Shown here: positions 6,765-53,757 of the stretch, one piece after another
Layout of the letters: the number at the start of each line of letters is the position of its first letter
Numbering within the stretch: position 1 is the first letter of the stretch
Assembly (NCBI GenBank): GCA_002269645.1
Contig: NIVC01001126.1
Coordinates: 1 to 64,000 of the forward strand
Source of the DNA: Macrostomum lignano
Taxonomy: Eukaryota
DNA length: 64,000 nucleotides
Direction: 5' to 3'
Made by a program: the position numbers and the translations under genes
Notes under the pieces: model-generated
Database searches by the model: none
Seen by the model: the letters and a program-made list of their open reading frames with translations, nothing else
What the model was told of the DNA's origin: nothing

Positions 6765-7055
6765 GATCCCTATGATCAGATGCAATTTGGGATTATCTAT
6801 CCCTATGATCATGTGATTTGGGATTATTGAGCTCTAGGATCATGGGATTTAGGATTATTGAGCTCTAGGATCATATGGGATTTGGGATTATTAATCCCTA
6901 TGATCATATGGGATTTTGGATTATTGATTCCTATGATCAGATGGGATTTGGGATTATTGAGCTGTAGGATCAGATGTGATATGGGATTATTTATCCCTAT
7001 GATAGATAGGATTTGGGATATTGAGCTCTAGGATCAGATGGGATTTGGGATTTGG
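6765..7055. repeat. About 33-bp repeat GGGATTTGGGATTATTGAGCTCTAGGATCAGAT
   Basis: About 8 diverged tandem copies. Confidence 0.8.
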
Positions 7056-7719
7056 GATTTTTCAATGCGATATTATAAGCTCTGCTAATTCGACGTCTTT
7101 AGAGGTATATATACGAGCTTCATTGAATAGCCAACCCAGGGCAGACAGACTAGCCGCCACTGCACCTGCTTCGCAATAAAGCTTTGTTGACTCAGAAAAC
7201 AGCAATTACCTGGCTAGGCTGGTCGAGATAATTGCCTAAGCCCAATCTTTGCAATTGGCTGTGGCTTGTGGAGTCTTTTTGTGTTGGAATTATTAAAGTT
7301 GGCGGTGCACGCAGGTGAATTAGCACGTTCCCAAATAGAAAATTGGCTGGGTTGAGAACTGTCAAGTTGCTTCGCCATTCTGTTGAGATATTTAACCCCA
7401 AGCCTCCTGTTCTCATCGATTGTACTTCTAGTCTGATTGTGCAGAAAGCATTTCAAAGGGAATTCTGAAAGGCGAGAAAGTTAAAAACAAAATGCTGTTC
7501 CATGGTCAGATCACAAAAAGGCTATTTCTGCCTTGACTAAAAGCAGCCACTTCTATTAGCTGTAAAAATGTGCACCAATATAATGACCACTTATGTAGAC
7601 GGCACCCTGTTTCTTGGGAAAAAGCTTACTTTAAGCTACTGACGTATTCAACATTTTCTACACAATTAATTTTTTTACAGATTCTTAAACTCAAATTAAT
7701 TGATATCTATCATGTTGCA

Positions 7720-8295
7720 GCCAACCCAGCGATCTAAGCTATCTATCCTTAGCAACCGAGCCATCTTCCCCTATCAACCCAGCTATCTCTAGCCTTAGCA
7801 ACCAAGCACCCTAACTAAGCTAGCTCGTTAGGGTGCTTCCATCCCTAGCAACCGTGCTAGCCCTAGCAACCAAGCTATCTATCCCTAGCAACCGGGACTA
7901 TCTATCCCTAGCAACCGAGCTATCTACTAGCAACCGAGCTATCTACTAGCAACCGAGATATCATCTACTCCTAGCAACCGAGCTATCTACTCCTAGCAAC
8001 CGAGCTAGTAACCCTAGCAACCAAGCTATCCACCCCAGCAACCGAGCTATCCAGCCCTAGCAACCGAGCTATCTATCCCTAGCAACCGAGCTATCTACTC
8101 CTAGCAACCGAGCTAGTAACCCTAGCAACCAAGCTATCCACCTCAGCAACCGAGCTATCTACTCCTAGCAACCGAGCTAGTAACCCTAGCAACCAAGCTA
8201 TCCACCCCAGCAACCGAGCTATATAGTCATAGCAACCGAGCTAGTAACCCTAGCAACAAAGCTACATGTATCCACCCCAGCAACCGAGCTATCGA
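7720..8295. repeat. About 20-bp CCTAGCAACCGAGCTATCTA array
   Basis: Tandem units sharing the TAGCAAC core. Confidence 0.85.
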
Positions 8296-8821
8296 GATTC
8301 TTCTGTCAGCTTATAGTCTAGAGATCAGAGCGTACATCTAATTCAATTGTTTGGTCTTGGTCTTGTCTATAGACAAAGACCAGAGTAAAAACAGCAAGCA
8401 AGTTTGTAATTCTATCTCTTTATCCTGTCTTCCAGTTTAAAAAACTGTAAAATTGCATTTTTGAGCACATTAAAATCTGATGATTAAACACCGACTTCCA
8501 TGCCCGTAGAGGTCAGAATTATCTACTTGCTGCTATAAATGGGAATTGTCAACTTAGTTGACTTAACCTGTATGACAAAAGCTGTATTTAATTACTCAGA
8601 GGCAGCAAACTGCATGTACAATTTGAAGCTGGTAAACAGTTTTTTACACAGCAAATGTGCATGCGCTCTAAACATTGCGATTGACGCTTATTGATATTGT
8701 CAGGCCTGTCAAATCGCTTCAGAAGCCTCACGCACCTTAAAGCTGGTTCTGCGAGCGAAGAATAGAAATGAAGAACAGCGTTACACCTTATTGACATGTA
8801 AGGTTAGGCTCCAGATTCTCT

Positions 8822-11800: not shown

Positions 11801-14800
11801 CTCCTCTCCTCACCTCTCCTCTCCTCTCCTCTCCACTCCTCTCCTCTCCACTCCTCTCCACTCCTCTCCTCACCTCTCCTCTCCTCTCCTCTCCTCTCCT
11901 CTCCTCTCCTCTCCTATCCTCTCCTCACCTCTCCTCTCCTCTCCACTCCTCTCCTCACCTCTCCTCACCTCTCCTCTCCTCTCCTCTCCACTCCTCTCCT
12001 CACCTCTCCTCTCCTCTCCACTCCTCTCCTCTCCACTCCTCTCCTCTCCACTCCTCTCCTCTCCACTCCTCTCCTCACCTCTCCTCTCCTCTCCTCTCCT
12101 CTCCTCTCCTCTCCTCTCCTCACCTCTCCTCTCTCACCTCTCCTCTCCTCTCCTCTCTCTCTCCTCTCCACTCCTATCCTCTCCTCACCTCTCCACTCCT
12201 CTCCTCTCCTCTCCTCTCCTCTCCTCACCTCTCCTCTCCTCTCCTCTCCACTCCTATTCTCTCCTCACCTCTCCTCCCTCTCCTCTCCTCTCCTCTCCTC
12301 TCCTCTCCTCTCCTCTCCTCTCCTCTCCTCTCCTCTCCTCTCCTCTCCTCTCCTCTCCTCACCTCTCCTCTCCTCTCCTCTCCTCTCCTCTCCACTCCTA
12401 TTCTCTCCTCACCTCTCCTCTCCTCTCCTCTCCTCTCCTCTCCTCTCCTCTCCTCACCTCTCCTCTCCTCTCCTCTCCTCTCCTCTCCATCCCTATCCTC
12501 TCCTCACCTCTCCACTCCTCTCCTCTCCTCTCCTCTCCTCTCCTCACCTCTCCTCTCCTCTCCTCTCCACTCCTCTCCTCACCTCTCCTCACCTCTCTCT
12601 CCTCTCCTCTCCTCACCTTCCTCTCCACTCCTCTCCTCTCCACTCTCTCCTCTCCACTCCTCTCCTCACCTCTCCTCTCTCTCTCCACTCCTCTCCTCTC
12701 CACTCCTCTCCTCTCCACTCCTCTCCTCTCCTCTCCACTCCTCTCCTCACCTCTCCTCTCCTCCTCTCCACTCCTCTCCTCTCCACTCCTCTCCACTCCT
12801 CTCCACCTCTCCTCTCCTCTCCTCTCCTCTCCTCTCCTCTCCTCTCCTATCCTCTCCTCACCTCTCCTCTCCTCTCCACTCCTCTCCTCACCTCTCCTCA
12901 CCTCTCCTCTCCTCTCCTCTCCTCTCCTCTCCTCACCTCTCCTCTCCTCTCCACTCCTCTCCTCTCCACTCCTCCTCTCCACTCCTCTCCTCTCCACTCC
13001 TCTCCTCACCTCTCCTCTCCTCTCCTCTCCTCTCTCTCCTCTCCTCACCTCTCCTCTCCTCACCTCTCCTCTCCTCTCCTCTCCTCTCCTCTCCACTCCT
13101 ATCCTCTCCTCACCTCTCCACTCCTCTCCTCTCCTCTCCTCTCCTCTCCTCACCTCTCCTCTCCTCTCCTCTCCACTCCTATTCTCTCCTCACCTCTCCT
13201 CTCCTCTCCTCTCCTCTCCTCTCCACTCCTCTCCTCTCCACTCCTCTCCTCACTCTCCTCTCCTCTCCTCTCCTCTCTCTCCTCTCCTCACCTCTCCTCT
13301 CCTCACCTCTCCTCTCCTCTCCTCCTCTCCTCTCCACTCCTATCCTCTCTCACCTCTCCACTCCTCTCCTCTCCTCTCCTCTCCTCTCCTCACCTCTCCT
13401 CTCCTCTCCTCTCCACTCCTATTCTCTCCTCACCTCTCCTCTCCTCTCCTCTCCTCTCCTCTCCTCTCCTCTCCTCTCCTCTCCTCTCCTCTCCTCTCCT
13501 CTCCTCTCCTCTCCTCACCTCTCCTCTCCTCTCCTCTCCTCACCTCTCCTCTCCACTCCTCTCCTCTCCACTCCTCTCCTCTCCACTCCTCTCCTCACTC
13601 TCCTCTCCTCTCCACTCCTCTCCTCTCCACTCCTCTCATCCCTCTCTTCTCATCTCCTCTCATCTCCTCTCCTCTCCTCTCCTCTCCTCTCTCCTCTCCT
13701 CTCCTCTCCTCTCCTCTCCTCTTATCTCCTCTCATCTCCTCTCTTCTCATCTCCTCTCTTCTCATCTCCTCTCATCTCCTCACCTCTCCTCTCCTCTCCA
13801 CTCCTCTCCTCTCCTCTCCTCACCTCTCCTCTCCTCTCCTCTCCACTCCTCTCCTCTCTCTCTCTCTCCACTCCTCTCCTCTCCACTCCTCTCCTCTCCA
13901 CTCCTCTCCTCTCCACTCCTCTCCTCACCTCTCCTCTCCTCTCCTCTCCTCTCCTCCTCTCCTCACCTCTCCTCTCCTCACCTCTCCTCTCCTCTCCTCT
14001 CCTCTCCTCTCCACTCCTATCCTCTCCTCACCTCTCCACTCCTCTCTCTCCTCTCCTCTCCTCTCTCACCTCTCCTCTCCTCTCCTCTCCACTCCTCTCT
14101 CCTCACCTCTCCTCTCCTCTCCTCTCCTCTCCTCTCCTCTCCTCTCTCTCCTCTCCTCTCCTCTCCTCTCCTCTCCTCTCCTCTCCTCTCCCACCTCTCC
14201 TCTCCTCTCCTCTCCTCACCTCTCCTCTCCACTCCTCTCCTCTCCACTCCTCTCCTCTCCACTCCTCTCCTCACCTCTCCTCTCCTCTCCACTCCTCTCC
14301 TCTCCACTCCTCTCATCTCCTCTCTTCTCATCTCCTCTCATCTCCTCTCCTCTCCTCTCCTCTCCTCCTCTCCTCTCCTCTCCACTCTCTCCTCTCCTCT
14401 TATCTCCTCTCATCTCCTCTCTTCATCTCCTCTCTTCTCATCTCCTCTCATCTCCTCACCTCTCCTCTCCTCTCCACTCCTCTCTCTCACCTCTCCACCT
14501 CTCCTCTCCTCTCCTCTCCACTCCTCTCCTCACCTCTCCTCTCCTCTCCACTCCTCTCCTCTCCACTCCTCTCCTCTCCACTCCTCTCCTCTCCACTCCT
14601 CTCCTCACCTCTCCTCTCCTCTCCTCTCCTCTCCTCTCCTCTCCTCACCTCTCCTCTCCTCACCTCTCCTCTCCTCTCCTCTCTCTCTCCTCTCCACTCC
14701 TATCCTCTCCTCACCTCTCCACTCCTCTCCTCTCCTCTCCTCTCCTCTCCTCACCTCTCCTCTCCTCTCCTCTCCACTCCTATTCTCTCCTCACCTCTCC

Positions 14801-15620
14801 TCTCCTCTCCTCTCCTCTCCTCTCCTCTCCTCTCCTCTCCTCTCTCTCTCCTCTCCTCTCCTCTCCTCTCCTCTCCTCTCCTCACCTCTCCTCTCCTCTC
14901 TCTCCTCACCTCTCCTCTCCACTCCTCTCTCTCCTCTCCTCTCCACTCCTCTCCTCACCTCTCCTCTCCTCTCCACTCCTCTCCTCTCCACTCCTCTCAT
15001 CTCCTCTCTTCTCATCTCCTCTCATCTCCTCTCCTCTCCTCTCCTCTCCTCCTCTCCTCTCCTCTCCTCTCCTCTCCTCTCCTCTTATCTCCTCTCATCT
15101 CCTCTCTTCTCATCTCCTCTCTTCTCATCTCCTCTCATCTCCTCACCTCTCCTCTCCTCTCCACTCCTCTCCTCACCTCTCCTCACCTCTCCTCTCCTCT
15201 CCTCTCCACTCCTCTCCTCACCTCTCCTCTCCTCTCCACTCCTCTCCTCTCCACTCCTCTCCTCTCCACTCCTCTCCTCTCCACTCCTCTCCTCACCTCT
15301 CCTCTCCTCTCCTCTCCTCTCCTCTCCTCTCCTCACCTCTCCTCTCCTCACCTCTCCTCTCCTCTCCTCTCCTCTCCTCTCCACTCCTATCCTCTCCTCA
15401 CCTCTCCACTCCTCTCCTCTCCTCTCCTCTCCTCTCCTCACCTCTCCTCTCCTCTCCTCTCCACTCCTATTCTCTCCTCACCTCTCCTCTCCTCTCCTCT
15501 CCTCTCCTCTCCTCTCCTCTCCTCTCCTCTCCTCTCCTCTCCTCTCCTCTCCTCTCCTCTCCTCTCCTCTCCTCTCCTCACCTCTCCTCTCCTCTCCTCT
15601 CCTCTCCTCTCCTTTCTTCT
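8822..15620. repeat. About 6.8-kb (CTCCT)n pentamer satellite with CACCT, CTCCA and CTATC variants
   Basis: Almost purely pyrimidine + strand; explains the 2278-aa SSPLL ORF and all reverse EERRG ORFs. Confidence 0.97.
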
Positions 15621-16001
15621 CTCCTAGCGGTGCTGCTTAGTCAAACACTGAGATTAAACGAACTCATATTTGTTGAGTGGCAGCTTTTCTGTAAATACTG
15701 CAGCCTATTGCGGCTTAGCGGCCAGGATCCTACAGGCAAGCACCAGGAACTGCTGCTTCTGTTGCAGATGGCTGCACTTAAATCAAGCAGTATGCATCCC
15801 CTTAAACAGGCACGTCTACTTTCATACTATATTAATAGTTTACTCTTTATTTTCATTTTTGTCTACGCACTTAAGTACGGCTCGTACGCAGTCACCGAAA
15901 ACGAGAAACAGTAGACTATAAGAAGCGATATTAAAACTTTGACTAGTTGGAAATTCATTTTGAGTTTAAAGTTATTTGTACTTTCGTGGTGTATGTTCAT
16001 G

Positions 16002-19337: not shown

Positions 19338-21830
19338 GCAGTCTCACTCATTCTCTCACTGTCTCACTCATTCTCTCACTGTCTCACTCAATATCTCACT
19401 GTCTCACTCATTCTCTCACTGTCTCACTCAATATCTCACTGTCTCACTCATTCTCTCACTGTCTCACTCATTCTCTCACTGTCTCACTCATTCTCTCACT
19501 GTCTCACTCAATATCTCACTGTCTCACTCATTCTCCCTCTGTCTCACTCATTCTCTCACTGTCTCACTCATTCTCTAACTGTCTCACTCATTCTCCCTCT
19601 GTCTTACTCATTCTCTCACTGTCTCACTCATTCTCTCACTGTCTCACTCATTCTCTCATTGTCTCATTCATTCTCTCACTGTCTCACTCATTCTCTCACT
19701 GTCTCACTCATTCTCTCATTGTCTCACTCACTCTCTCATTGTCTCATTCATTCTCTCACTGTCTCACTCATTCTCTCACTGTCTCACTCATTCTCTCATT
19801 GTCTCACTCACTCTCTCATTGTCTCACTCACTCTCTCATTGTCTCACTCATTCTCTCACTGTCTCATTCATTCTCTCACTGTCTCACTCATTCTCTCACT
19901 GTCTCACTCATTCTCTCACTGTCTCACTCATTCTCTCACTGTCTCACTCATTCTCCCTCTGTCTCACTCATTCTCTCATTGTCTCACTCATTCTCTCACT
20001 GTCTCACTCATTCTCTCATTGTCTCACTCATTCTCTCACTGTCTCACTCATTCTCTCATTGTCTCACTCATTCTCTCACTGTCTCACTCATTCTCTCACT
20101 GTCTCACTCATTCTCTCACTGTCTCACTCATTCTCTCACTGTCTCACTCATTCTCTCACTGTCTCACTCATTCTCCCTCTGTCTCACTCATTCTCTCACT
20201 GTCTCACTCATTCTCTCACTGTCTCACTCATTCTCCCTCTGTCTCACTCATTCTCTCACTGTCTCACTCATTCTCTCACTGTCTCACTCATTCTCCCTCT
20301 GTCTCACTCATTCTCTCATTGTCTCACTCATTCTCTCACTGTCTCACTCATTCTCTCATTGTCTCACTCATTCTCTCACTGTCTCACTCATTCTCTCACT
20401 GTCTCACTCATTCTCTCATTGTCTCACTCACTCTCTCACTGTCTTACTCATTCTCTCACTGTCTCACTCATTCTCTCACTGTCTCACTCATTCTCTCACT
20501 GTCTCACTCATTCTCCCTCTGTCTCACTCATTCTCTCATTGTCTCACTCATTCTCTCACTGTCTCACTCATTCTCTCATTGTCTCACTCATTCTCTCACT
20601 GTCTCACTCATTCTCCCTCTGTCTCACTCATTCTCCCTCTGTCTCACTCATTCTCTCACTGTCTCACTCATTCTCCCTCTGTCTCACTCATTCTCTCATT
20701 GTCTCACTCATTCTCTCACTGTCTCACTCATTCTCTCATTGTCTCACTCATTCTCTCACTGTCTCACTCATTCTCTCATTGTCTCACTCATTCTCTCACT
20801 GTCTCACTCATTCTCCCTCTGTCTCACTCATTCTCCCTCTGTCTCACTCATTCTCTCACTGTCTCAGTCATTCTCTCACTGTCTCACTCATTCTCTCATT
20901 GTCTCATTCATTCTCTCACTGTCTCACTCATTCTCTCACTGTCTCACTCATTCTCCCTCTGTCTCACTCATTCTCTCACTGTCTCACTCATTCTCTCATT
21001 GTCTCACTCATTCTCTCATTGTCTCACTCATTCTCTAACTGTCTCACTCATTCTCCCTCTGTCTCACTCATTCTCTCACTGTCTCACTCATTCTCTTATT
21101 GTCTCACTCATTCTCTCACTGTCTCACTCATTCTCTCATTGTCTCACTCATTCTCTCACTGTCTCACTCATTCTCCCTCTGTCTCACTCATTCTCTCACT
21201 GTCTCACTCATTCTCTCACTGTCTCACTCATTCTCCCTCTGTCTCACTCATTCTCTCATTGTCTCACTCATTCTCTCACTGTCTCACTCATTCTCTCATT
21301 GTCTCACTCATTCTCTCACTGTCTCACTCATTCTCTCACTGTCTCACTCATTCTCTCACTGTCTCACTCATTCTCTCACTGTCTCACTCATTCTCTCACT
21401 GTCTCATTCATTCTCTCACTGTCTCACTCATTCTCCCTCTGTCTCACTCATTCTCTCATTGTCTCACTCATTCTCTCACTGTCTCACTCATTCTCTAACT
21501 GTCTCACTCATTCTCCCTCTGTCTCACTCATTCTCTCACTGTCTCACTCATTCTCTCATTGTCTCATTCATTCTCTCACTGTCTCACTCATTCTCTCACT
21601 GGCTCACTCATTCTCTCACTGTCTCACTCATTCTCCCTTTGTCTCACTCATTCTCTCATTGTCTCACTCATTCTCTCATTGTCTCACTCATTCTCTCACT
21701 GTCTCACTCATTCTCCCTCTGTCTCACTCATTCTCTCATTGTCTCATTCATTCTCTCACTGTCTCACTAAAAATCTCACTGTCTCACTCATTCTCTCACT
21801 GTCTCACTCAGTATCTCACTGTCTCACTCA
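19338..21830. repeat. About 2.5-kb 20-bp minisatellite GTCTCACTCATTCTCTCACT
   Basis: Exact 20-nt periodicity over about 125 units; ORFs 19659..22018 are artefacts of it. Confidence 0.97.
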
Positions 21831-22377
21831 TTGTTTCACCCACTTCTAGACTCCCGAAGTCAGCCGTCCAAGAATTCAATCTTCAGTGCACTATCGGTAT
21901 GCAACAGAGCCGCAAGAATTCCCCTATATGGAATATCTTCCTCTTTCTGGCCAGAAGAACCGATGCCTACCCAGCAAACACACAATTTCCCCTGAGCAAT
22001 GCAATAGCCCTTGGCTAGTCAAACAAACCTGGGTGGGATTTGGGAGGGGGGGCATTGATTCTCGGTACTAGGAATTACCATTCTGCGAGGACATAGTGAG
22101 GGCATAAGATCTGGTTGCAAATCATTTTGGCATAATTGTGTTGGCACAAGTATTTATAGAATAGATCAATGTACCCCCAAGCTAACCTATAATTAAGTTA
22201 GTAAGTCCATTGTGCCCGCTAAAATATTACTCGCTTTGTCAGCTAATTGATCGGGTATTGGGTCAGCTGATATGGCAGTCAGCTCACTTTTATTATCTGT
22301 AATCCCATTTATGCAGACTTGGCATCTGGCTTGCAATTTGTGCAGAAGTTGGTTTGATGAGAAATATTCACAAATAT

Positions 22378-28875: not shown

Positions 28876-30076
28876 GTTATATTATTAATATATATGTAGA
28901 TAAAAAATCGTCAGTTTGTCGAAAATCGCCATCTACTTGCGGTCATCAAGAATATGAACGACGTCGACTTTTCGCCATCAATAGTGGAAAACGCGACGTC
29001 GCACACTCTACATCTGATGGCGAAAATTTCGACGTCGAAATCGTGGTTCAAATCGACATGAAATTTCGACGTCGCTTTTCGACGTCATTTCGACGTGATT
29101 TTTACCGCCGGGTGATGTCTAGACGACAATGTGACAAAAGATTTGACTTTCTTGCAGTACTTGACAGTGGGATTACAGATCAGCTTGATGATGAACGCTG
29201 CATGCTGATATGTATGAATACATGTAACTACAGTAACTGATTTCGGATCAAAGACTTCTAAAGTACGTGATATACGTTGCTTTAGTTGCCCTTGTGTCTG
29301 ATGTACGCGTACAACACCCCCTGCATGTTTTGACTCACGTATGTGCACATGTAATTATTTGGAAGTTTAAACTTCAAACATGGTAACTGTAAATGCACTG
29401 TAAAATTTAAGTAGATATTGCTATTTTCTAAGCCGTGCATGCCATCCAAGCTGAATTCTACGAGTATATCAAAGCGCAATACACGCATTTTGTGCATAAC
29501 ACATTTTCCAATAATTATGTCTATATTTCGAGTTACATCTTAGCTTCTACAAGTAGTCAAGTTAAATTGAAGTATGATAAAAATCCATTGATTAATGGTT
29601 TAAATGCTTCGACTGCATATAAAGAAGTCTGGAATTGTGAGCATAAATTAAAGAACTACCGAGCTACATGCACTTTTCGTTTTCATGAGAAACTGTCCGA
29701 AAATTTTTAATTCGTTTTTTATGTTACGTACGCTACGGAACCAATGAGCATAAGTAGGTAGGTCTAAGTAAGTAAGTATTAGATATAATGCTTCAGATCA
29801 GTAGGTCGTCACCATAGAAAATTAAGATTGTTGTACCCGGTTTGCAACGCAAGCAATTATAACAAAAAAATCGATTTATTTTAGGAATTTTCATGTAATA
29901 CAAAATTAAAACTTTTTTTGTAGTTTTTTATTTTTTATACTGCTTAATGTTGTTCTTTAGATGCATATAGGAGCTGTATTGAGTATTTTCAATGGATATT
30001 AGTTTTTTCAAACTGAAAAAGAATTGCACTATTATTTTGTCTCCGTCTTACACCATCCCAAAGGTCAAACGACTCG

Positions 30077-30424
30077 ATGGCCGACAACGTAAAGGTTGCA
30101 GTCCGTGTGCGGCCATTCATATCCTTTTGTCATTCAATTTAAATATACTTAAAACTTCAATGCCACTTAATTCATTTTGTTTATTTTTTTACCAATACCA
30201 TGTATGTAATGTATGATCCAAAATGTTCTTGTTTGCATACGATTGAAAGCAGCACTACTCTGCAGGGCAAAAACCTAGATGAGAAATTGTAAAAAATCTA
30301 TAAAATCTTACTTTATTTTATGGGCATTGTTGTTACAGGCAAATAGCGAATATTAATAAGGGTATGATGGATCATTAATAATTAGTAAAAAGTTAAAGTA
30401 AAATATTATTTATATCATTATTAA

Positions 30425-30469
<45 letters not shown>

Positions 30470-31901
30470 TATATTTTATATCCTTTAGTTTTTATTTGAA
30501 ATTGTGTGTTTCCATTGAAACTGTATTCATAGGTATGTATTTTTTCATCTCTAGGTTTAACTTAAGTTGAGCTCAACTCAAAATTATTTTTATGTTTAAC
30601 TCCTTAACTCTATTCGCAAACTTAATATTCTGACACAATGACCGCGAAGTCAGCCGGCAGAGCAAGCTGATCATTCAGATGAGCGGCAACCAGACCTGCA
30701 TCACGGATCCGAGTTCAGGTCAGGATAAAAAGTTTGCATTCGACTATTCCTATTGGTCGCACGATGGATTTAAAGAGAAGACAAATGGTTACCTGGAGCC
30801 CGCCAATTCTAAATATGCTGATCAGGTGGGTTTCCCATTCGTTTTAATTCAGAATAATTAGCTAAGTAATGAAACATTTTGGCTGGATTTCTATCTAAAT
30901 CAATTATGTCTCAGATAAGACTGTAGGTTAACCGCCAGAAAAAGATAAGATTTCTTTATAAACTAATTTGTCTTAATTACGGTACAGCAATTACTATCTG
31001 GATAAACTCAAATATGCATAATGCTTATGAATTTCCTATACGAGGTACTTATCAATTTAGCCCAGGGGTTGGCAAACTCCGGCCTGAAAAACCTCACTAT
31101 CCGGCCCTCGGGTACTTTGAAACTTCACAATAGCTCAGGGTTTGTCTTTTCCCTTTCCTCTTCTCTCTTCTCTCATCTCTTCTCTCATCGATCTCTTATC
31201 TCGTCTTTCACCTCTCATACCTTCTTTCATCTTTTTAGCTGGGCCCTTGAGGTAAAAAGTTTGCCGACCCCTGATTTAGCCCCCATCAAGATAACTCGAT
31301 CGCGAATCATGCTGCCGAATAACATGCATAGAAACGCGTATTCGACGACCTTGGCCGGGGCGTCCTTGACAACGCGTGGAAAGGCTACAACTGCAGCCTG
31401 TTCGCCTACGGTCAGACTGGCAGCGGCAAGTCTTACTCAATGATTGGCTACGGCGCTAACAAGGGCATTGTGCCCGTCGCGTGCGAAGAACTGTTCCGGG
31501 CAATAGACGAGAAACGGCCGAGTTTGCAGGCTGGAGAGGAGTTCCAAGTGTCCCTGTCCATGACTGAGATCTACAATGAGCAGGTGCGCGACCTGCTAGT
31601 AACTAAATCCACGGTTGGCGGACTCAAAGTTCGTCAGCATCCAAAAAAAGGTTTCTACGTTGAGCAGCTGACTATCGCACCCGTGAGCAGCTATGCTCAG
31701 ATTGAGGCCAAAATTGCGGACGGCTCGCACAACCGCACTGTGGCGGCCACCAACATGAACGCCACCAGCAGCCGGGCGCATACCATTGTGGCCATCAGCT
31801 TCGTGCAGAAGAGCCAAGGCGCCGGTGGTCAAAACATGACCAAAACTTCGGTTATGAATCTGGTGGACTTGGCTGGCAGGTGAGGATAAAGTTAGTTAGT
31901 G

Positions 31902-31941
<40 letters not shown>

Positions 31942-34900
31942 GGTTAGTCAGTTAGTCAGTTAGTTATTCGCCTATTGATGTCTAAATAAATTATAAGTGA
32001 TTGAAACCTAAAAAGCGAAACACACTACTGCTAACTACTTACCAACCGGCAGCGAGCGCGCGGAATCAACTGGCGCCACAGGGGATCGCCTGAAGGAGGG
32101 ATCCGCCATCAATCTGTCGCTCAGCACGCTGGGCAACTGCATCAAAGCTTTGGCGGATCAGAGCTCGGGAAACTCCAAAGTGATGGGTCAGTGTCAACCT
32201 TTGTGCGTTCTAATTATATTCTGATTGTGAATATCATGATTATAATCGTTGTTGTTCCTCTTTCCAGTCCCTTTCAGGGACTCCGTGCTGACCAAGCTGC
32301 TGCAGAATGCTCTTGGAGGCAACAGTAAAACTGTCATGGTAGGCTCTTCTTGATGACAATTTGTGACAGCGGTGAATGTAGCCTGTAGCAAACCCCCTCA
32401 CACCAAAACTATTAAAACGACACTATCAAACCAAAATCCCCCACCATCTAACTAAAACCCACATCAACAAACCAAAAACCCACACCATCAAACCAACAAC
32501 CCACATTATCAAACCAACAACCCACATTATCAAACCAAAAACCCACACTATCAAACCAACAACCCACATTATCAAACCAAAAACCCACACCATCAAACCA
32601 AAAACCCACACCATCAAACTAAAAACCCACACAATCAAATTTAAAAACCCACACCATCAAATTACCAAAAACCCACACCATCAAACCAAAAACCCACATT
32701 ATCAAACCAAAAATCCACACCAATAAACCAAAAACCTACACCATCAATCAAAAATCCCACGCCATCAAACTAAAAACCCACACCATCAAACTAAAAACCC
32801 ACACCACCAAGCTAAAAACCCACACCATCAAACCTAAAACCCACACCACCAAGCTAAAAACCCACACCATCAAACCAAAAACCCACATTATCAAACCAAA
32901 AACCCATACCATTAAACCAAAAACCCACACCATCAAACCAAAAACCCACATTATCAAACCAAAAACCCACACCATCAAACCAAAAACCCACACCATCAAG
33001 CTAAAAACCCACGCCATCAAACTAAAAACCCACACCATCAAACTAAAAACCCACACCACCAAGCTAAAAACCCACACCATCAAACCTAAAACCCACACCA
33101 CCAAGCTAAAAACCCACACCATCAAACCAAAAACCCACATTATCAAACCAAAAACCCATACCATTAAACCAAAAACCCACACCATCAAACCAAAAACCCA
33201 CATTATCAAACCAAAAACCCACACCATCAAACCAAAAACCCACACCATCAAGCTAAAAACCCACACCATTTAACCAAAAACCCACACCATCAAACTAAAA
33301 TCCCACACCATCAAGCTAAAAACCGACACCATTAAACCAAAGACCCACACCATTAAACCAAAAACCCACACCATTTAACCAAAAACCCACACCATCAAAC
33401 TAAAAACCCACACCATTAAACCAAAAACCCACACCATCAAACTAAAATCCCACACCATCAAGCTAAAAACCCACACCATTAAACCAAAAACCCACACCAT
33501 CAAACTAAAAACCCACACCATCAAACATCCCTGACTGCAGATCGCCGCCCTCTCTCCCGCCGACATCAACTTCGACGAGACCCTGTCAACTCTGCGCTTC
33601 GCGGATCGAGCCAAAGCCATCAAGACTAAAGCTGTGGTGAACGAGAGCCCAACTGATAAGCTGATCCGGGAGCTCAGAGAGGAGAACTCCAGACTGATGG
33701 CGATGCTTAAGGCAGGAGGAGGTGGCGGCGGGGACATCACCGACGGCGGCGGTGACACCGGCGAGGACCAGGCTGAGTCCGAGGAGCGAATGCGCGAGCT
33801 GATGAAGAAGAATCAAGAGGAGATGGAAGCGATGGAGCGAGCCTGGGCTGAGAAGCTGGCCCAGGCGCAGGCAGAAGCGCAGGAACAAATTCAGGAGCGA
33901 AAAGCGGAGAGCGAGCGAAAGAAGAACGTGCCGCATCTGTGGAATCTTAACGAGGACGCAGCTCTGTCCGGCATGATAGTGCAATTCGTTGATCCCGGAG
34001 CCGTGCAGACTGTGGGCAGAGACGGCGACTTCCAGCTGAAGGGAGTCAAGTGAGAGAAAAGTCGAAGTTTCGTTTGACAAAGACCCCCCCCCCACTCCCT
34101 TAGACATTCACCCACTCCCTTAGATACCCACCCCACTCCCTTAGACATCCACCCACTCCATTAGACATCCACCCATTCCCTTAGACACCCAACCTCACTC
34201 CCTTAGATACCCACCCTCACTCCCTTAGACCCACCCCACTCCCTTAGATACCCACCCCACTCCCTTAGACATCCACCACACTCCCTTAGACATCCACCCA
34301 CTCCATTAGACATCCACCCACTCCCTTAGACACCCAACCTCACTCCCTTAGATACCCACCCACTCCCTTAGACACCCACCCCACTCCCTTAGATACCCAC
34401 CCCACTCCCTTAGACATCCACCACACTCCCTTAGACATCCACCCACTCCATTAGACATCCACCCACTCCCTTAGACACCCAACCTCACTCCCTTAGATAC
34501 CCACCCACTCCCTTAGACACCCACCCCACTCCCTTAGACACCCACCACACTAGCTCCCTTAGACACCCAACCCCTCTCCCTTAGATACCCACCCCACTCC
34601 CTTAAACACCCACCCCACTCCCTTGGACACCAACCTCACTCCCTTAGATACCCACCCACTCCCTTAGACACCCACCCCACTCCCTTAGACACCCACCCCA
34701 CTCCCTTAGACACCCACCACACTAGCTCCCTTAGACACCCAACCCCTCTCCCTTAGATACCCACCCCACCCCACCCCACTCCCTTAAACACCCACCCCAC
34801 TCCCTTGGACACCAACCCTACTCCCTTAGATACCCACCCCACTCCCTTAGACACCCAAAGCCACTCCCTTAGACACCCACCCCACTTCCTTAGACACCCA

Positions 34901-37900
34901 GCCCACTCCCTTAGACACCCAAAGCCACTCCCTTAGACACCTACCCCACTCCCTTAGACAACCACCCTAATCATTTAGACACCCACCCCACTCCGTTACA
35001 CCAAGCCACTCGATTGCTACTGAACTTAAAAAGTTCCACCTCCTCGCCCTTAACAACAGCATCCAAGCCAGACACGCTGTTCTGAAGAATGTCAACGGCT
35101 CTGTCACGGTAACGCCTATCGATCTCGCCAAAGTGTTCGTCAACGGCCAGGAGGTGAACCAGGAGACTCAGCTGCGCCATCACGACCGAGTCCTGTTCGG
35201 GACCAATCACCTGTACGTCTTCCATCATCCGGTTGACTACGCGAAGCAGGTCAAATCCGGGCAGGACGTCTCGCCGCCGACATTTGAAGAGGCCCAGTCT
35301 GAGATTGCTGAGAGTTCCGGGGTGATGGGACTGTTGGGTGACAAGGCCAAGAGCAACAGTGCAGGTCAGTCTGTCTGGGGTCGGCAAACTTTTTAAGTTA
35401 AATGCCAGATATAGAATCTAGCGCATAACTGTGGGCCAGAGAGAGAATAAGGGAGGAGAGAGGGGAGATAAGAGTGGAGAGGGGAGAGAAAGGGAGATGA
35501 GAGAGGAAAGGGGAGACGAGCAGGGAGATGAGAGAGGAGAGACGAGAGGAGGGGAGAGAGAAATTGAGAGAGGAGAAGGGAGAGGGGAGATAAGAGAGGA
35601 GGGGAGAGAGGAGGGAAGAGAGGAGAGGGAGAGGGGAGATGAGAGAGAGGAGAGAGAAGGGGAGAGGGGAGGGGAGAGGGGGAGGGGAGAGGAGGAGGGG
35701 AGAGGGGGAGGGGAGAGGGTAGAGGAGAGAGGAGAGGAAAGAAAAAAGAGAGGAGAGCTGAGAAGAGACGCTAATCAGAGTGGGTCGGATTGCTACTGAG
35801 AAGTTTCAGAGGACCCGAGGGTCGGGTGTTTGCCAGCATCTGTTCTTTGCTAACTCAACAAACAAGCATAAACCCAAGCTTTCCCCGACTCGCTACTCAT
35901 TCCAGAGGACATGCTACTCATGGACGATTTGGTGAAGCTGTACCCGCAGCTGCAAGAGGCCAACGCCATGTCTGAGGAGATGGACCGGCGGGTTTGGTTC
36001 GAACTGGTGCTGGTCTCCGCCCAGGGCAGGGGACTGAGAGAGGGCGAAGGCCGGACTGAGGTGAGCCTGGGGATGAAGCATTCCGTACTCGATATTCACT
36101 GAACCGAGCATTCACTGAACCGAGCATTCACTGAACCGAGCATTCACTGAACCGAGCATTCACTGAACCGAGCATTCACTGAACCGAGCATTCACTGAAC
36201 CGAGCATTCACTGAACCGAGCATTCACTGAACCGAGCATTCACTGAACCGAGCATTCACTGAACCGAGCATTCACTGAACCGAGCATTCACTGAACCGAG
36301 CATTCACTGAACCGAGCATTCACTGAACCGAGCATTCACTGAACCGAGAATTCACTGAACCGAGCATTCACTGAACCGAGCATTCACTGAACCGAGCATT
36401 CACTGAACCGAGAATTCACTGAACCGAGCATTCACTGAACCGAGAATTCACTGAACCGAGAATTCACTGAACCGAGCATTCACTGAACCGAGCATTCACT
36501 GAACCGAGCATTCACTGAACCGAGCATTCACTGAACCGAGCATTCACTGAACCGAGCATTCACTGAACCGAGCATTCACTGAACCGAGCATTCACTGAAC
36601 CGAGCATTCACTGAACCGAGCATTCACTGAACCGAGCATTCACTGAACCGAGCATTCACCCAACCAAATTAAGTGACTGAATTAGACTTCAGAAGACCTA
36701 TCAATAAATATTTCAGGTCTGCGTCAGCGTACAAAACCTGGACAACAACAACGAGTTCTTTTGGTCCAAAGAAAAGTTCAGCGACCGAAAGTACCTGATG
36801 CAGGACATGTACCAGAACTACACTGAGGGGGCAGACTGGGAGCTGGCCAAAGAGAAAGATCCTTTCTGGGACCCGCCGGACACCCCAATCATGATTGGCA
36901 CCATTCACGTGTACCTGCAGAGCCTTGCCTACCTAATTGAGGTTAGCGAAAGTTTCAATGTCACCGACTTCCGCGGCGAAGACCAGGGCAAGTTGGACAT
37001 CGAGCTGAGACCCTGCGGCGACAACTGGGAGGAGCTGACGGACGAGTACGCCGAGCCCGAAGACCTTCTTGGACAGGCCTTGAACTTCAAAATTAAAATT
37101 CACGGCGGAAGAGACCTGTCTGCTAAGTTTGCAAGCGTAAGTGCTTGTCGAACTTTTGCATTGACACCCACCCCGCTATCCAATGCGACACCCATCTCGC
37201 TATCCAATGTGACACCCACCCCACTGTGGGACATCCAATCCAACATGCGACACCCACCCCACTTTGCGACACTCACCCCGCTATCCAATGCGACACTCAC
37301 CCCGCTATCCAATGCGACACCCACCCCGCTATCCAATGCGACACCCACCCGCTATCGAATGCGACACCCACCTCGCTATCCAATGCGACACCCACCCCGC
37401 TATCCAATGCGACACCCACCCCACTATGCGACACCCACCCCACTATGCGACACTCACCCCACTATGCGACACCCACCCCACTATGCGACACCCACCCCAC
37501 AACTCACTCTCTCGCACAACCGCACATTGCAGTACTTCTGTCAGTATAAGTTCTACCTGGAAGATCAGTACACAAAAACGGGCGAAGTGGCTAAGCCAGT
37601 GAATCCTCGTTTCGAATTCGAGCATCAATACTCGTTTAAACCGGCCACAAAGCAACTGCTGGAGTACCTGCAGCACTCCTACACGATTGTCGAGCTGTGG
37701 GGCAAGCAGAGATGTAGCGATAAGAAAGTGAACAAATCTACCAAGGAGCTCATGAAGGAGAAGCGCAAGGCTCAAGCTGAGAGCGCGAAGGCTCTAGGAG
37801 TGAGATGAAGGGCTGATTTTTTAAGATCTTTTTAAATATCTTAATTGCACTTTAATTGCACTCTGTAAACTTCTGTTGATGATTTTTTTCATTTCGCTTC

Positions 37901-42419: not shown

Positions 42420-43535
42420 CTGACAGACAGTGAGGAATAGTGACAGACAGTGGGAGAGAATGACAAACAGTGGAAGTGACAGTGGGAGAGAATAAAAGTC
42501 AGTGAGAGAGAGAGTGACAGACAGCAGGAGAGAGTGAGACAGTGGGAGGGAGTGAGACAGTAGGAGAGAGTGAGATAGTGGGAGAGAGTGAGACAGTGGG
42601 AGAGAGTGAGACAGTAGGAGAGAGTGAGACAGCGGGAGAGAGTGAGATAGTGGGAGAGAGTGAGACAGTAGGAGAGAGTGAGATAGTGGGAGAGAGTGAG
42701 ACAGTAGGAGAGAGTGAGATAGTGGGAGAGAGTGAGACAGTGGGAGGGAGTGAGACAGTAGGAGAGAGTGAGATAGTGGGAGAGAGTGAGACAGTAGGAG
42801 AGAGTGAGACAGCGGGAGAGAGTGAGATAGTGGGAGAGAGTGAGACAGTAGGAGAGAGTGAGACAGCGGGAGAGAGTGAGATAGTGGGAGAGAGTGAGAC
42901 AGTGGGAGAGAGTGAGACAGTGGGAGAGAGTGAGACAGTGGGAGAGAGTGAGACAGTGGGAGAGAGTGAGACAGTGGGAGAGAGTGAGACAGTGGGAGAG
43001 AGTGAGACAGTGGGAGAGAGTGAGACAGTGAGAGAGTGAGACAGTGGGAGAGAGTGAGACAGTGGGAGAGAGTGAGACAGTGGGAGAGAGTGAGACAGTG
43101 GGAGAGAGTGAGACAGTGAGAGAGTGAGACAGTGGGAGAGAGTGAGACAGTGGGAGAGAGTGAGACAGTGGGAGAGAGTGAGACAGTGGGAGAGAGTGAG
43201 ACAGTGGGAGAGAGTGAGACAGTGGGAGAGAGTGAGACAGTGGGAGAGAGTGAGACAGTGGGAGAGAGTGAGACAGTGAGAGAGTGAGACAGTGGGAGAG
43301 AGTGAGACAGTGGGAGGGAGTGAGACAGTGGGAGAGAGTGAGACAGTGGGAGAGAGTGAGACAGTGGGAGAGAGTGAGACAGTGAGAGAGTGAGACAGTG
43401 GGAGAGAGTGAGACAGTGAGAGAGTGAGACAGTGGGAGAGAGTGAGACAGTGGGAGAGAGTGAGACAGTGGGAGAGAGTGAGACAGTGAGAGAGTGAGAC
43501 AGTGGGAGAGAGTGAGACAGTGAGAGAGTGAGACA
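42420..43535. repeat. 18-bp minisatellite GAGACAGTGGGAGAGAGT
   Basis: ORFs VGESET and SHCLTL are its translations. Confidence 0.95.
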
Positions 43536-44699
43536 GCGGACAGGAAACTCAGCAACTCAAAAGCGAAACCGCACAAAATTTTTTGCAGCAGCAACTTTCG
43601 ATTTAAAAACCCCATCAGAGCAACAATCAGCTGCTTATAGATTTGAAAATTTGCTCGCAAAAATCAATATATTTCAGTAAGAAGCTTTTTGATTTGCATT
43701 TTAGTCAAGTGCAGCAAATGGTGTGATAATATTGTGTAGAAATCAACAATTTCAATACTGGACAGCATACAAGACTTATGCTTATTTAGTGCGAAAACAC
43801 GACAGACATGATTAATTAAGCAGGTGAAATTTAATTAAAGTTTAAACAGGTAATTTCGAACGAGAATAGGCGTGATAAAGTAATTATTGTTATTTACATA
43901 ACAAATCATAGCAATAATATAAAAATGTATTAGAAGCACAAGCAAGCATAAACTATTTTTGCGATTTTAGGTAAAAAATCAATACTATTGACAAGTAAAC
44001 TGTTCACTTCAAGTTTACTACAAGTAAACTTAAAAAAGTAAACTTAAAACTTCCTAGCAATTATTAGAAAATACGAAAGCTGGTGGTCAATTTTTTTGTG
44101 ACCGGCCTAAAGACAACATACGTTAAGAAATAGGAATATCTTGTTACTAAAAATAGATCATTCTTTTGAACCTACGATAGCCGCTAATTGGCTAGTTCCA
44201 GTAGCGTACATTTAATCGGAATCCCCTGCTGCTAAAAATAGATCATTCACCCAACACTTCGTCAGCCGCTAATTGGCTATTTCTCAGTAGCGTACATTTT
44301 AATAGAAATCACGTTGCTAAAAATAGATCATAAGTCATCAAAACCCACGCCAGCAGCTGTAGTAGCTATTAACCGAAACAGCCTTTGACAAAAATTTCCT
44401 AAAAAGCATAAATGTAAGGCAAATACGCAAATGTATACATGTGCAAGCATCAGAAACAGTTTAGCTATGTAAAACTGACAAGTATTTAAATACACGGCAC
44501 TAATGTAATCAGGCTCTTTAAAACGACTTCATTTGCGTTAATTGCTTGCTTATGAATTTTTGAAACTGACACAATGCAATAAAAAACATTCGAGCACAAA
44601 ACGAATATTATAAAAAAGATATAAATAACTACAACTGAACAGTAAAGTTAAAAAAAAGGGAGTGGCAAAGACCCACTATTACGAGTAGATTGGGTCTCA

Positions 44700-45232: not shown

Positions 45233-46941
45233 TTATTTAAAAGACTTCTTAGTAGCCAAGCGCAGCTCCCGCAGAGTGTGAATAAGCGAGCAGGCCAGCA
45301 CAATGCTCAGCAGCAGCACAATAGCCATGCCCAGAGCGCACAAGGCCACAGCCAGCAGGTTCAAATAGAGCTGCTGGGCCATGCGAACCGCGCAGCCCTG
45401 GTGAAAGATATTAGACGGATGGGACTCTCTAGAGCAGCCGGGGGCGTCGCTGCGACAGCAGGATGTGGGAGTGTACTCGGTGGTCGTGGCCCGGCTGTTG
45501 TTCCAATAGTAGGCCGACTCGCGCCAATCGCGCCACGATACGCTGCCGCAGCATTTCAGCTCGGAGTGAAGCCGATCAACGGCCCGAGTGACGTCCGGAT
45601 CGATACGATAGCGATTGAGCAGAGACTCCTTCACGGACTCTTGCAGGCGGGTCTGGGGGCGGAGTTGAGGCCGAGTTTATGAGGCACTGGGGTTCAAAAT
45701 TCACAAAACTATAATGTCACTCTTAAAAATTCACAATTTCACGCCTGATTTAACAAAGTCACTTCTTAATTCAGACTGTCACTCCCCGATTCAGAATGTC
45801 ACTCCCCAATTCAGAATGTCACTCCCCAATTCAGAATGTCACTCCCCAATTCAGAATGTCACTCCCCAATTCAGAATGTCACTCCCTAATTTAAAATGAC
45901 ACTCCTTAATTAAGAATGTCACTCCCCAATTCAGAATGTCACTCCCTAATTTAGAATGACACTCCCCAATTCAGAATGCCACTCCCCAATTCAGAATGAC
46001 ACTCCTTAATTTAGAATGTCACTCCCCAATTCAGAATGTCACGTTATTTAGAATGACACTCCCCAATTCAGAATGTCACTCCCCAATTCAGAATGTCACT
46101 TCTCAATTTAGAATGACACTCCCCAATTCAGAATGTCACTCCCCAATTCAGAATGTCACTTCTCAATTTAGAATGACACTCCTTTATTCAGAATGTCACT
46201 CCTGTATTTTGAATGACACTCCCCAATTCAGAATGTCACTCCCCAATTCAGAATGTCACTCCCAAATTTAGAATGACACTCCCCAATTCAGAATGTCACT
46301 CCCCAATTCAGAATGTCACTCCCCAATTCAAAATGTCACTTCTCAATTCAGAATGTCACTCCCCAATTCAGAATGTCACTCTCCAATTCAGAATGTCACT
46401 CCCCAATTCAGAATGTCACTCCCCAATTCAGAATGCCATTCCTTGATCCACAATGTCACTCCCCGTTTCAGAAGCTGTCAATCCGTGACTGACGTTGCCT
46501 CTCATCGGGTCAGACTATCACTCTGCAATCCCTAATTTCACCCCAAAGGCAGCTATCTGAGAATCCAACCTGCAGCGAGCCGGCAAACACAAATCCGATG
46601 GCGCACACGGCGCACTCTACTATGAGTAGAGCAACCAGAAAGCCGGTATAGACGCTCAGCAGGCGGATCCTATTGAGAAATATGCCAACAAACCCGAGCA
46701 CAGCGAAAGCGAAGATCAAGCCGCCGCAAGCGGTGAGCAGGAAATGGCTGAGAAAGAACATCTCCCCAGTCAGCACGGAGATGTAGTTGCGTCGGGACAA
46801 CAGCAGCCAGACGCCAAGTATGCAGACGGCCAGACCGCAGAGTGCTACTAATAGATTAAAGAAGATTAGCACGGCTTTGATGCACTCTTTGGAGCAGCAA
46901 TAGCGCTGCTTCTCATTGCGGATGCCCTGGTATTTGGCCAT
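45233..46941 (-). CDS. Tetraspanin (CD151/TSPAN11-like); exons 46941-46570 and 45652-45233; about 263 aa
   Basis: Three N-terminal TM helices; EC2 with CCG, PTSCC and GC motifs; fourth TM helix; phase-0 GT-AG intron. Confidence 0.9.
45775..46440. repeat. 20-bp minisatellite CACTCCCCAATTCAGAATGT in the tetraspanin intron
   Basis: Visible 20-nt periodicity. Confidence 0.92.

Positions 46942-49795: not shown

Positions 49796-53757
<3,962 letters not shown>

What the first reader, a model, noticed from the sequence alone, without database searches (positions are those of the whole stretch)
30119..30636. Textbook U12-type AT-AC intron at the start of the kinesin motor domain
The ORF track misses exon 1 ([14 protein letters not shown], 30077-30118), and no GT donor joins it to the next exon in frame. 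The intron starts ATATCCTTTTG, carries TCCTTAAC about 29 nt from its end, and ends in AC; removing it restores the conserved VRVRPF-NDRE. These are the established U11/U12 recognition elements. The organism must therefore have a working minor spliceosome, which several invertebrate lineages such as C. elegans have lost. Standard annotators would probably mis-model the N-terminus. Slow U12 splicing could rate-limit this motor (inference).
Basis: partly seen in the sequence, partly recalled or inferred. Interest (0 to 1): 0.72.

Follow-up and report, generated by a model that had tools for sequence, protein, structure and literature searches.

The report
Conserved minor-spliceosome intron in a kinesin gene
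The first intron of a KIF28/KLP-6-type kinesin gene carries the rare AT-AC "minor spliceosome" signals, and related genes from annelids to acorn worms have the same signals at the same codon boundary, so it is a genuine but ordinary example of a known intron class, odd only in how far its branch site lies from the intron end.

Summary
Exon 1 (30077-30118, [14 protein letters not shown]) is followed by ATATCCTTTTG. TCCTTAAC lies at 30601-30608. The intron ends CAC at 30636, and exon 2 starts with NDRE at 30637. Of all frame-preserving donor/acceptor pairs, only 30119-30636 restores the kinesin motif VRVRPF-NDRE. An in-frame TGA at 30631-33 and the lack of any AG before 30637 rule out a GT-AG solution. 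The gene is a kinesin-3 of the KIF28P/KLP-6 family, and its other mapped introns are GT-AG.

The strongest evidence is comparative. The same phase-0 position carries RTATCCTT(T) plus a nearby U12-type branch motif in Lamellibrachia (two paralogues), Pinctada, Biomphalaria, Priapulus, Cyprideis and Saccoglossus. The nematode Ancylostoma has no intron there.

One caveat: the perfect branch motif is 29 nt from the 3' splice site, against a published optimum of 11-13 nt and 10-14 nt in the orthologues. A weak ACTTAAT sits at the orthologous 11-nt spacing, so which branch site is used is open.

The warning about annotation holds in part: two of seven inspected gene models lose exon 1. A functioning minor spliceosome and rate-limiting splicing remain inferences, because no RNA data were available. 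This is a new member of a known kind, of modest interest.

The parts
30077..30118 (+). Coding exon 1 of the kinesin-3 (KIF28P/KLP-6-like) gene: [14 protein letters not shown], from the initiator ATG
   Evidence: The 14 residues are identical to Lamellibrachia exon 1. Pfam Kinesin profile position 1 starts at residue 10.
30119..30636 (+). Intron 1, 518 nt, phase 0, AT-AC termini, U12-type signals
   Evidence: Orthologous U12-type introns.
30119..30127 (+). U12-type 5' splice site ATATCCTTT. The -3..+9 12-mer TTCATATCCTTT is identical to the listed SCN8A minor-intron 12-mer
   Evidence: MIDB supplement of PMC6717393. Consensus RUAUCCUU (PMC10853781).
30601..30608 (+). Perfect U12 branch-point consensus TCCTTAAC (distal candidate), with the branch A 29 nt from the intron end
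   Evidence: the only copy in the window, both strands. Consensus UCCUURAY.
30620..30626 (+). Weak branch-point-like ACTTAAT (proximal candidate). The motif end is 10 nt from the 3' splice site, the same spacing as in the orthologues
   Evidence: Inference from spacing only. AAACTTAAC is listed as the branch motif of the human EXOSC5 minor intron.
30634..30636 (+). 3' splice site CAC. YAC is conserved in the AT-AC orthologues
30631..30633 (+). In-frame TGA just upstream of exon 2. It prevents any upstream extension of exon 2
   Evidence: upstream frame reads ...LIF*H.
30620..30621 (+). Competing AC 14 nt downstream of the distal branch A. Using it would add 15 nt containing the TGA, giving an unproductive mRNA
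   Evidence: Read from the sequence. Its use is hypothetical.
30637..30825 (+). Exon 2: [19 protein letters not shown]...SKYADQ
31332..31879 (+). Exon 3 (P-loop GQTGSGKS to DLAG), flanked by GT-AG introns
32053..32186 (+). Exon 4 ([17 protein letters not shown]...)
32268..32338 (+). Exon 5 ([12 protein letters not shown]...KTVM)
33541..34038 (+). Exon 6 (end of motor, neck coil, start of FHA). The 3' end is approximate
36708..37130 (+). Downstream exon region of the same gene carrying the KIF1B domain
   Evidence: PF12423, E 3.3e-11. Exon limits not mapped.

Best explanation
Window 30119-30636 is a genuine U12-type (minor-spliceosome) intron of the AT-AC subtype. It interrupts, in phase 0, the first beta-strand motif (VRVRPF|NDRE) of a kinesin-3 motor of the KIF28P/KLP-6 family.

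Proposed mechanism, inferred from the established U12 pathway:
- U11 snRNP pairs with ATATCCTTT at the 5' splice site.
- U12 snRNP pairs with a branch motif near the 3' end.
- U4atac/U6atac.U5 complete catalysis, joining 30118 to 30637.

The intron is old. It was present at this codon boundary in the common ancestor of protostomes and deuterostomes. It was deleted in a nematode, a lineage without minor splicing.

Which branch site is used is open. The candidates are the perfect TCCTTAAC 29 nt upstream and the weak ACTTAAT at the ancestral 11-nt spacing. I rate them about even.
For: Shown:
- Exact signals and coordinates.
- Only this pair restores the conserved motif, and no AG acceptor is available.
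- Homology crosses the junction without a gap.
- Introns 2-5 of the same gene are ordinary GT-AG.
- The motifs are far beyond chance.

The same position carries U12 signals in these loci:
- Lamellibrachia L002: ATATCCTTTGA...CCTTAAC-9-CAC
- Lamellibrachia paralogue L010: GTATCCTTG...TTCCTTGAC-9-TAG
- Pinctada L003: ATATCCTTTTT...CCTTAAC-10-TAC
- Biomphalaria L001: GTATCCTTTGG...TCCTTAAC-10-TAG
- Priapulus L007: ATATCCTTTTTT...TTCCTTAGT-13-CAC
- Cyprideis L009: ATATCCTTTTTC...TTCCTTAAC-10-CAC
- Saccoglossus L006: ATATCCTTTTGT...TCCATAAC-9-TAC, plus a second gene with ATATCCTTTT

Intron length varies from 110 to 5144 nt, and nothing beyond the signals is alignable. Ancylostoma L008 reads straight through VRVRPFNDREK.

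Consensus definitions come from PMC2831892 and PMC10853781.
Against: There is no transcript or lariat evidence. No protein 90% or more identical to this gene was found in the 5.8-billion-protein collection, and an exact look-up of one window ORF (36798-37808) found no record. So the junction is inferred.

The perfect branch motif is 29 nt from the 3' splice site, well outside the 11-13 nt optimum. An AC 14 nt downstream of it (30620-21) would give a stop codon if used.

The proximal ACTTAAT would pair poorly with the conserved U12 branch-binding sequence: about 4 Watson-Crick pairs plus one G-U, by hand and from memory of the U12 sequence.

No minor snRNA gene lies in the window, which says nothing either way about the rest of the genome.
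Confidence: 0.9

Rival explanations
1. The intron is U12-type, but in this species the signals have drifted so that much of the splicing is unproductive. U12 binds the strong distal TCCTTAAC, and the spliceosome uses the AC at 30620-21, 14 nt downstream. This inserts 15 nt with an in-frame TGA. Productive mRNA would then be a minor, possibly regulated, fraction.
For: The distal motif is perfect and is the only copy in the window. Its 29-nt distance to the productive site is outside the optimum. An AC lies at near-optimal spacing (sequence). From memory of Dietrich et al. 2001 (paper not held), spacings above about 20 nt activate alternative 3' sites. The review notes that U12 3' splice-site choice is error-prone.
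Against: The competing site is AAC, whereas the AT-AC orthologues use YAC. The rest of the gene is intact with open conserved exons. A candidate branch motif exists at the ancestral spacing.
Confidence: 0.12
2. It is an AT-AC intron removed by the major (U2-type) spliceosome, the rare 'type II' AT-AC class.
For: U2-dependent AT-AC introns exist (PMC1557818).
Against: Those introns resemble the U2 5' consensus apart from the termini. Here the 5' site is the U12 consensus ATATCCTTT, a U12 branch consensus is present, and there is no polypyrimidine tract (Y fraction 0.55). The orthologues keep the U12 motifs through AT-AC to GT-AG subtype switches.
Confidence: 0.02
3. Exon 1 is not used. The real transcript starts from another first exon, or from within exon 2, and the ATATCCTT/TCCTTAAC pair is coincidence.
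For: No RNA evidence is available. Several deposited models in other species start inside exon 2.
Against: The joint chance is about 1e-8. Exon 1 is 14/14 identical to the annelid exon 1, and the same exon-intron architecture recurs in seven other species. The TGA at 30631-33 and the lack of an AG prevent any other exon from joining at NDRE. Truncated models lack the first strand of the motor, which every kinesin has.
Confidence: 0.03

Closest known systems
Canonical U12-type AT-AC introns, e.g. the SCN8A minor intron listed in the Minor Intron Database
   Same: Identical 5' splice-site 12-mer TTCATATCCTTT, a TCCTTAAC-class branch motif, AT-AC termini and no polypyrimidine tract.
   Different: The perfect branch motif is 29 nt from the 3' splice site instead of about 11-13 nt. 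The host gene family (KIF28/KLP-6) is absent from the mouse/human minor-intron lists held with PMC6717393, where only Kif6 and Kifap3 appear among Kif* names.
Orthologous intron 1 of KIF28P/KLP-6-like genes in Lamellibrachia, Pinctada, Biomphalaria, Priapulus, Cyprideis and Saccoglossus
   Same: Same codon boundary (VRVRPF|N), phase 0, RTATCCTT(T) 5' site, U12-type branch motif, YAC or TAG end.
   Different: In those species the branch motif ends 9-13 nt from the 3' splice site. Here that spacing is occupied only by a degenerate ACTTAAT, and the perfect motif lies 18 nt further upstream. Biomphalaria and the second Lamellibrachia gene have switched to the GT-AG subtype.
C. elegans KLP-6 (PDB 7wrg) and the Ancylostoma homologue
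   Same: Closest solved structure (E 6e-156) with the same N-terminal motif [12 protein letters not shown].
   Different: The Ancylostoma gene has no intron at this position, in line with loss of U12 splicing in C. elegans and some other nematodes (PMC3584512). The C. elegans gene itself was not inspected.
U2-type introns a few bases downstream in other kinesin-3 genes (Orbicella, Octopus, Lottia)
   Same: An intron interrupts the same N-terminal motif.
   Different: GTAAGT or GTAGGA donors lie 8 nt (phase 2) or 6 nt (phase 0) downstream, with a polypyrimidine tract and CAG. Whether these are conversions of the U12 intron through a nearby cryptic donor, or independent introns, was not resolved.

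Membership tests
U12-type (minor) spliceosomal intron, AT-AC subtype | 5' splice site matching RTATCCTT at +1..+8 | tested here: met
   ATATCCTT(T) at 30119-30127. Consensus from PMC2831892 and PMC10853781.
U12-type (minor) spliceosomal intron, AT-AC subtype | Branch-point sequence matching TCCTTRAY near the 3' end | tested here: met
   TCCTTAAC at 30601-30608, inside the -55..-5 region used by intronIC.
U12-type (minor) spliceosomal intron, AT-AC subtype | Short branch point to 3' splice-site distance (optimum 11-13 nt) | tested here: inconclusive
   29 nt for the perfect motif, which does not meet the optimum. 11 nt for the weak ACTTAAT. The orthologues show 10-14 nt.
U12-type (minor) spliceosomal intron, AT-AC subtype | Terminal dinucleotides AT...AC (or GT...AG), not mixed | tested here: met
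   AT at 30119-20 and AC at 30635-36.
U12-type (minor) spliceosomal intron, AT-AC subtype | No distinct polypyrimidine tract | tested here: met
   Pyrimidine fraction 0.55 in the 20 nt before the terminal AC, with no T/C run.
U12-type (minor) spliceosomal intron, AT-AC subtype | Conservation of class and position in orthologues | tested here: met
   Eight orthologous or paralogous introns mapped at both ends in seven other species, plus the 5' splice site of a second Saccoglossus gene.
U12-type (minor) spliceosomal intron, AT-AC subtype | Excision actually dependent on U11/U12/U4atac/U6atac, with the junction seen in RNA | not testable with these tools
   No transcript data for this species. 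No snRNA genes in the 64-kb window.
Kinesin-3, KIF28P/KLP-6 subfamily | Full kinesin motor domain followed by a kinesin-associated neck, an FHA domain and a KIF1B domain | tested here: met
   Pfam PF00225 1-327/327 (E 1.9e-102), PF16183, PF00498, PF12423.
Kinesin-3, KIF28P/KLP-6 subfamily | Closest relatives are KIF28P/KLP-6 rather than KIF1A, KIF13 or KIF14 | tested here: met
   7wrg (KLP-6) at 522 bits versus KIF1A at 377 and KIF13B at 339. The top database hits are named KIF28P or kinesin-related protein 1, at up to 75% identity. No phylogeny was built.

The most novel reading that the evidence does not exclude
In this species the ancestral branch site has decayed to ACTTAAT, and a perfect TCCTTAAC sits 29 nt from the 3' splice site, beyond the spacing that the human minor spliceosome tolerates. 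One possibility is that this animal's minor spliceosome can use a branch point about 29 nt away. The other is that competition between the two branch sites, and the AC at 30620-21, makes productive splicing of this ciliary-type kinesin a regulated on/off step coupled to nonsense-mediated decay. Separately, the U2-type introns 6-8 nt downstream in other kinesin-3 genes may be snapshots of U12-to-U2 conversion through cryptic donors.
Probability: 0.12. Interest if true: 0.5.

Novelty: new member of a known kind. Interest (0 to 1): 0.3.

Why it matters
The intron marks the source animal as one that very probably keeps minor splicing. It also adds KIF28/KLP-6 to the set of genes carrying a U12-type intron conserved across protostomes and deuterostomes. 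That family is absent from the mouse/human minor-intron lists I could search, and no searchable paper links KIF28 with minor introns.

There is a practical point too. Two of seven inspected deposited gene models lose the 14-codon first exon, and with it the first strand of the motor, because of this intron. Annotation pipelines should allow AT-AC junctions here.

The displaced branch motif is a small natural test case for the spacing rule of the minor spliceosome. None of this changes what is known about the intron class.

Tried and rejected
- **Rfam on the whole window:** no snRNA or other RNA family, so minor-spliceosome presence could not be tested here.
- **Exact look-up of a window ORF:** not on record. 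The best protein identity was 75%, so the species stays unidentified. The closest hits are an annelid and molluscs.
- **Literature:** no paper holds both KIF28 and 'minor intron'. One irrelevant hit for U12-type intron + kinesin + AT-AC. The MIDB supplement has no Kif28.
- **Primary papers on spacing and branch-site mutagenesis** (PMC86782, PMC60238, PMC2578861) are not held. The spacing rule is therefore cited from the review, plus memory where marked.
- **Other ATATCCTT copies:** 6229(+) lies in a minisatellite; 62273(-) has no open frame upstream; 30478(+) is inside the intron with no exon. All were rejected as splice sites.
- **GT-AG/GC-AG alternatives:** all delete conserved residues.
- **The repeat finder with the default seed** missed the MITE in intron 2. 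A 7-nt seed found it.
- **PWM/intronIC score:** not computed, because the matrices are not available here.
- **Structure prediction and fold search:** not used, as they have no bearing on the question.

Full report
**1. The observation**

Reading 29700-31500 and a script check confirm every coordinate.
- An ATG at 30077 opens [14 protein letters not shown], ending at 30118.
- The next bases are ATATCCTTTTG.
- TCCTTAAC lies at 30601-30608.
- The intron ends ...CTGACAC at 30636.
- 30637 starts AAT GAC CGC GAA (NDRE), in an exon that runs to 30825 and is followed by GTGGGT.

The intron is 518 nt and in phase 0. The ATG is the first in its stop-free segment. The frame of exon 2 has a TGA at 30631-33, and there is no AG between that stop and 30637. 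Exon 2 therefore cannot be reached by a conventional acceptor.

One search enumerated every GT/GC/AT donor and AG/AC acceptor pair that keeps the frame open. That gave 113 pairs. Only 30119-30636 keeps both VRVRPF and NDRE. All GT-AG and GC-AG pairs delete conserved residues.

**2. Chance**

RTATCCTTT is expected 1.25 times in the window on both strands and occurs three times. TCCTTAAC is expected 2.56 times and occurs once, in this intron.

A 9-mer at one exact position (about 1e-5), combined with an 8-mer inside the -55..-5 region that intronIC scans (about 9e-4; region from PMC7367187), gives about 1e-8.

The other ATATCCTT copies are not splice sites:
- 6229(+) sits in a minisatellite.
- 62273(-) has no open frame upstream.
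- 30478(+) is inside the intron.

**3. The gene**

Joining exons 1-6 (30077-30118, 30637-30825, 31332-31879, 32053-32186, 32268-32338, 33541-about 34038) gives an open 494-residue product. Introns 2-5 are GT-AG.

The best solved structure is 7wrg, full-length C. elegans KLP-6 (E 6e-156, 522 bits). KIF1A scores 377 bits and KIF13B 339. The alignment runs [12 protein letters not shown] straight across the junction.

Pfam finds the Kinesin motor from residue 10, covering profile positions 1-327 of 327. It also finds Kinesin_assoc, FHA and, further downstream, KIF1B.

The closest database proteins are named KIF28P or kinesin-related protein 1. They reach at most 75% identity (Lamellibrachia, Biomphalaria). 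The source species is therefore not in that collection. It is probably a spiralian, but this is not established.

**4. Comparative test**

I fetched genomic loci for eleven homologues and located the VRVRPF exon and the next exon.

These loci have an intron at exactly the F|N boundary:

| Species (locus) | 5' end | 3' end | Length |
|---|---|---|---|
| Lamellibrachia satsuma (L002) | ATATCCTTTGA | CCTTAAC-9-CAC | 956 nt |
| L. satsuma paralogue (L010) | GTATCCTTG | TTCCTTGAC-9-TAG | 1581 nt |
| Pinctada imbricata (L003) | ATATCCTTTTT | CCTTAAC-10-TAC | 5144 nt |
| Biomphalaria glabrata (L001) | GTATCCTTTGG | TCCTTAAC-10-TAG | 110 nt |
| Priapulus caudatus (L007) | ATATCCTTTTTT | TTCCTTAGT-13-CAC | 471 nt |
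| Cyprideis torosa (L009) | ATATCCTTTTTC | TTCCTTAAC-10-CAC | 946 nt |
| Saccoglossus kowalevskii (L006) | ATATCCTTTTGT | TCCATAAC-9-TAC | 860 nt |

A second, head-to-head Saccoglossus gene also starts its intron with ATATCCTTTT.

Beyond the first nine or ten bases and the branch motif, the introns are unalignable. The signals are therefore held by selection, not by recent common descent.

The species span Lophotrochozoa, Ecdysozoa and Deuterostomia. The intron thus predates the protostome-deuterostome split. Two subtype switches to GT-AG are visible.

The nematode Ancylostoma reads straight through VRVRPFNDREK. This fits intron deletion in a lineage without minor splicing (PMC3584512).

Orbicella and Octopus homologues instead have GTAAGT introns 8 nt downstream, with a polypyrimidine tract and CAG. 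A Lottia KIF1A-like gene has GTAGGA 6 nt downstream. The review notes that U12-to-U2 conversion can occur through a cryptic donor near the old site. Whether that happened here was not resolved, because orthology of these genes was not established.

**5. What is not textbook**

The review gives an optimum branch-to-3'ss distance of 11-13 nt. In the orthologues the branch A lies 10-14 nt from the intron end.

In the window the perfect motif places it 29 nt away. The orthologous spacing is occupied by ACTTAAT (30620-30626, branch A 11 nt from the end).

By hand, and using the U12 branch-binding sequence GAGUAAGGA from memory:
- The distal site can form about nine pairs around a bulged A.
- The proximal site can form about four Watson-Crick pairs plus one G-U.

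Bona fide minor introns with comparably weak motifs exist, for example AAACTTAAC in human EXOSC5 (supplement of PMC6717393).

From memory of Dietrich et al. 2001 (not held), spacings above about 20 nt activate alternative 3' sites, and the minor spliceosome does not scan. An AC at 30620-21 lies 14 nt from the distal branch A. Using it would add 15 nt containing the TGA. That site is AAC, whereas the AT-AC orthologues use YAC.

I therefore leave the branch site open at roughly even odds. I give about 0.12 to substantial unproductive splicing.

**6.

- *A working minor spliceosome.* This is a sound inference from intact signals under evident constraint, but it is untested. The window holds no Rfam family at all.
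- *Annotators would mis-model the N-terminus.* This is partly borne out.
  - Pinctada P0006 starts with translated intron (YRIRLTLTPGY) before NEREK, and its exon 1 lies 5.1 kb upstream of the called gene.
  - Saccoglossus P0024 starts at an internal Met of exon 2.
  - Four more deposited models begin inside exon 2 but were not inspected at DNA level: Mactra P0008, B. pfeifferi P0021, Desmophyllum P0027 and Ridgeia P0033.
  - Five inspected models have the junction right: P0001, P0002, P0040, P0093 and P0097.
- *Rate-limiting slow splicing.* This is speculation, and nothing here bears on it.

**7. Comparison with what is known, and novelty**

The intron meets the sequence definitions of the U12 class (ATATCCTT, TCCTTAAC, AC; PMC2831892). 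Its 5' 12-mer is identical to that of the SCN8A minor intron. It is not a U2-type AT-AC intron, since those resemble the U2 donor (PMC1557818).

The host family is not among the Kif* entries of the mouse/human minor-intron lists I could search; only Kif6 and Kifap3 are there. No searchable paper links KIF28 to minor introns.

It is thus a new member of a known kind, already implicitly annotated in some genomes.

**8. Verdict**

- Observation: confirmed.
- Interpretation: supported, with the spacing caveat.
- Confidence that this is a minor-spliceosome intron spliced 30118^30637: 0.9.
- Interest: 0.3.

Noticed in passing
window 8831-15621: A 6.8-kb (CCTCT)n pentanucleotide array of about 1364 copies. 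It produces a GC skew of -1.0 (no G at all) over several kilobases.
   Followed up: partly
window, many sites, e.g. 757-1435, 2046-2640, 19341-21832, 32420-33526, 34081-34998, 36094-36659, 42478-43536, 45768-46473, 52697-53449: The window is unusually dense in strand-asymmetric minisatellites with units of about 16-48 nt, several inside introns of the kinesin gene. They create long spurious ORFs in the six-frame listing.
   Followed up: partly
window 31063-31273 (intron 2 of the kinesin gene): A 211-bp MITE-like insertion. It has 16-nt terminal inverted repeats CAGGGGTTGGCAAACT/AGTTTGCCGACCCCTG (94% complementary), flanked by an 8-bp direct duplication ATTTAGCC (31055-62 and 31274-81). From general knowledge, an 8-bp duplication is typical of hAT-type elements.
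   Followed up: partly
window 30478-30486: A second exact ATATCCTTT lies inside the U12 intron, 359 nt downstream of the real 5' splice site, with no exon upstream. It is probably chance in AT-rich sequence. Whether it binds U11 is unknown.
   Followed up: partly
window 30404-30472: A (TAT)23 microsatellite inside the U12-type intron.
   Followed up: no
window 45233-45634 and 46510-46941, minus strand: Two ORFs that by eye look like exons of a tetraspanin: hydrophobic segments and a CCG motif (KCCGSVSWRDW) in the translations. Not tested against any family library.
   Followed up: no
L004 4600-7258 and 10001-20355; L006 1-9058 (minus strand) and 10001-30215: Orbicella has a tandem near-identical duplicate of the first kinesin exons. 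Saccoglossus has two head-to-head KIF28-like genes, both with ATATCCTTTT after VRVRPF.
   Followed up: partly
L001, L002, L008, L010, L011 (called genes): In several deposited annotations the motor/FHA part and the KIF1B-domain part are called as two adjacent genes. Where the motor gene and the gene after it are both fully listed, both are on the + strand. This probably splits one kinesin-3 gene.
   Followed up: no
L004 about 10118-10205, L005 about 21396-21860, L011 about 6054-12864: Other kinesin-3 genes (Orbicella, Octopus, Lottia) carry U2-type introns 8 or 6 nt downstream of the U12 position. They may be U12-to-U2 conversions through cryptic donors, or independent introns.
   Followed up: partly
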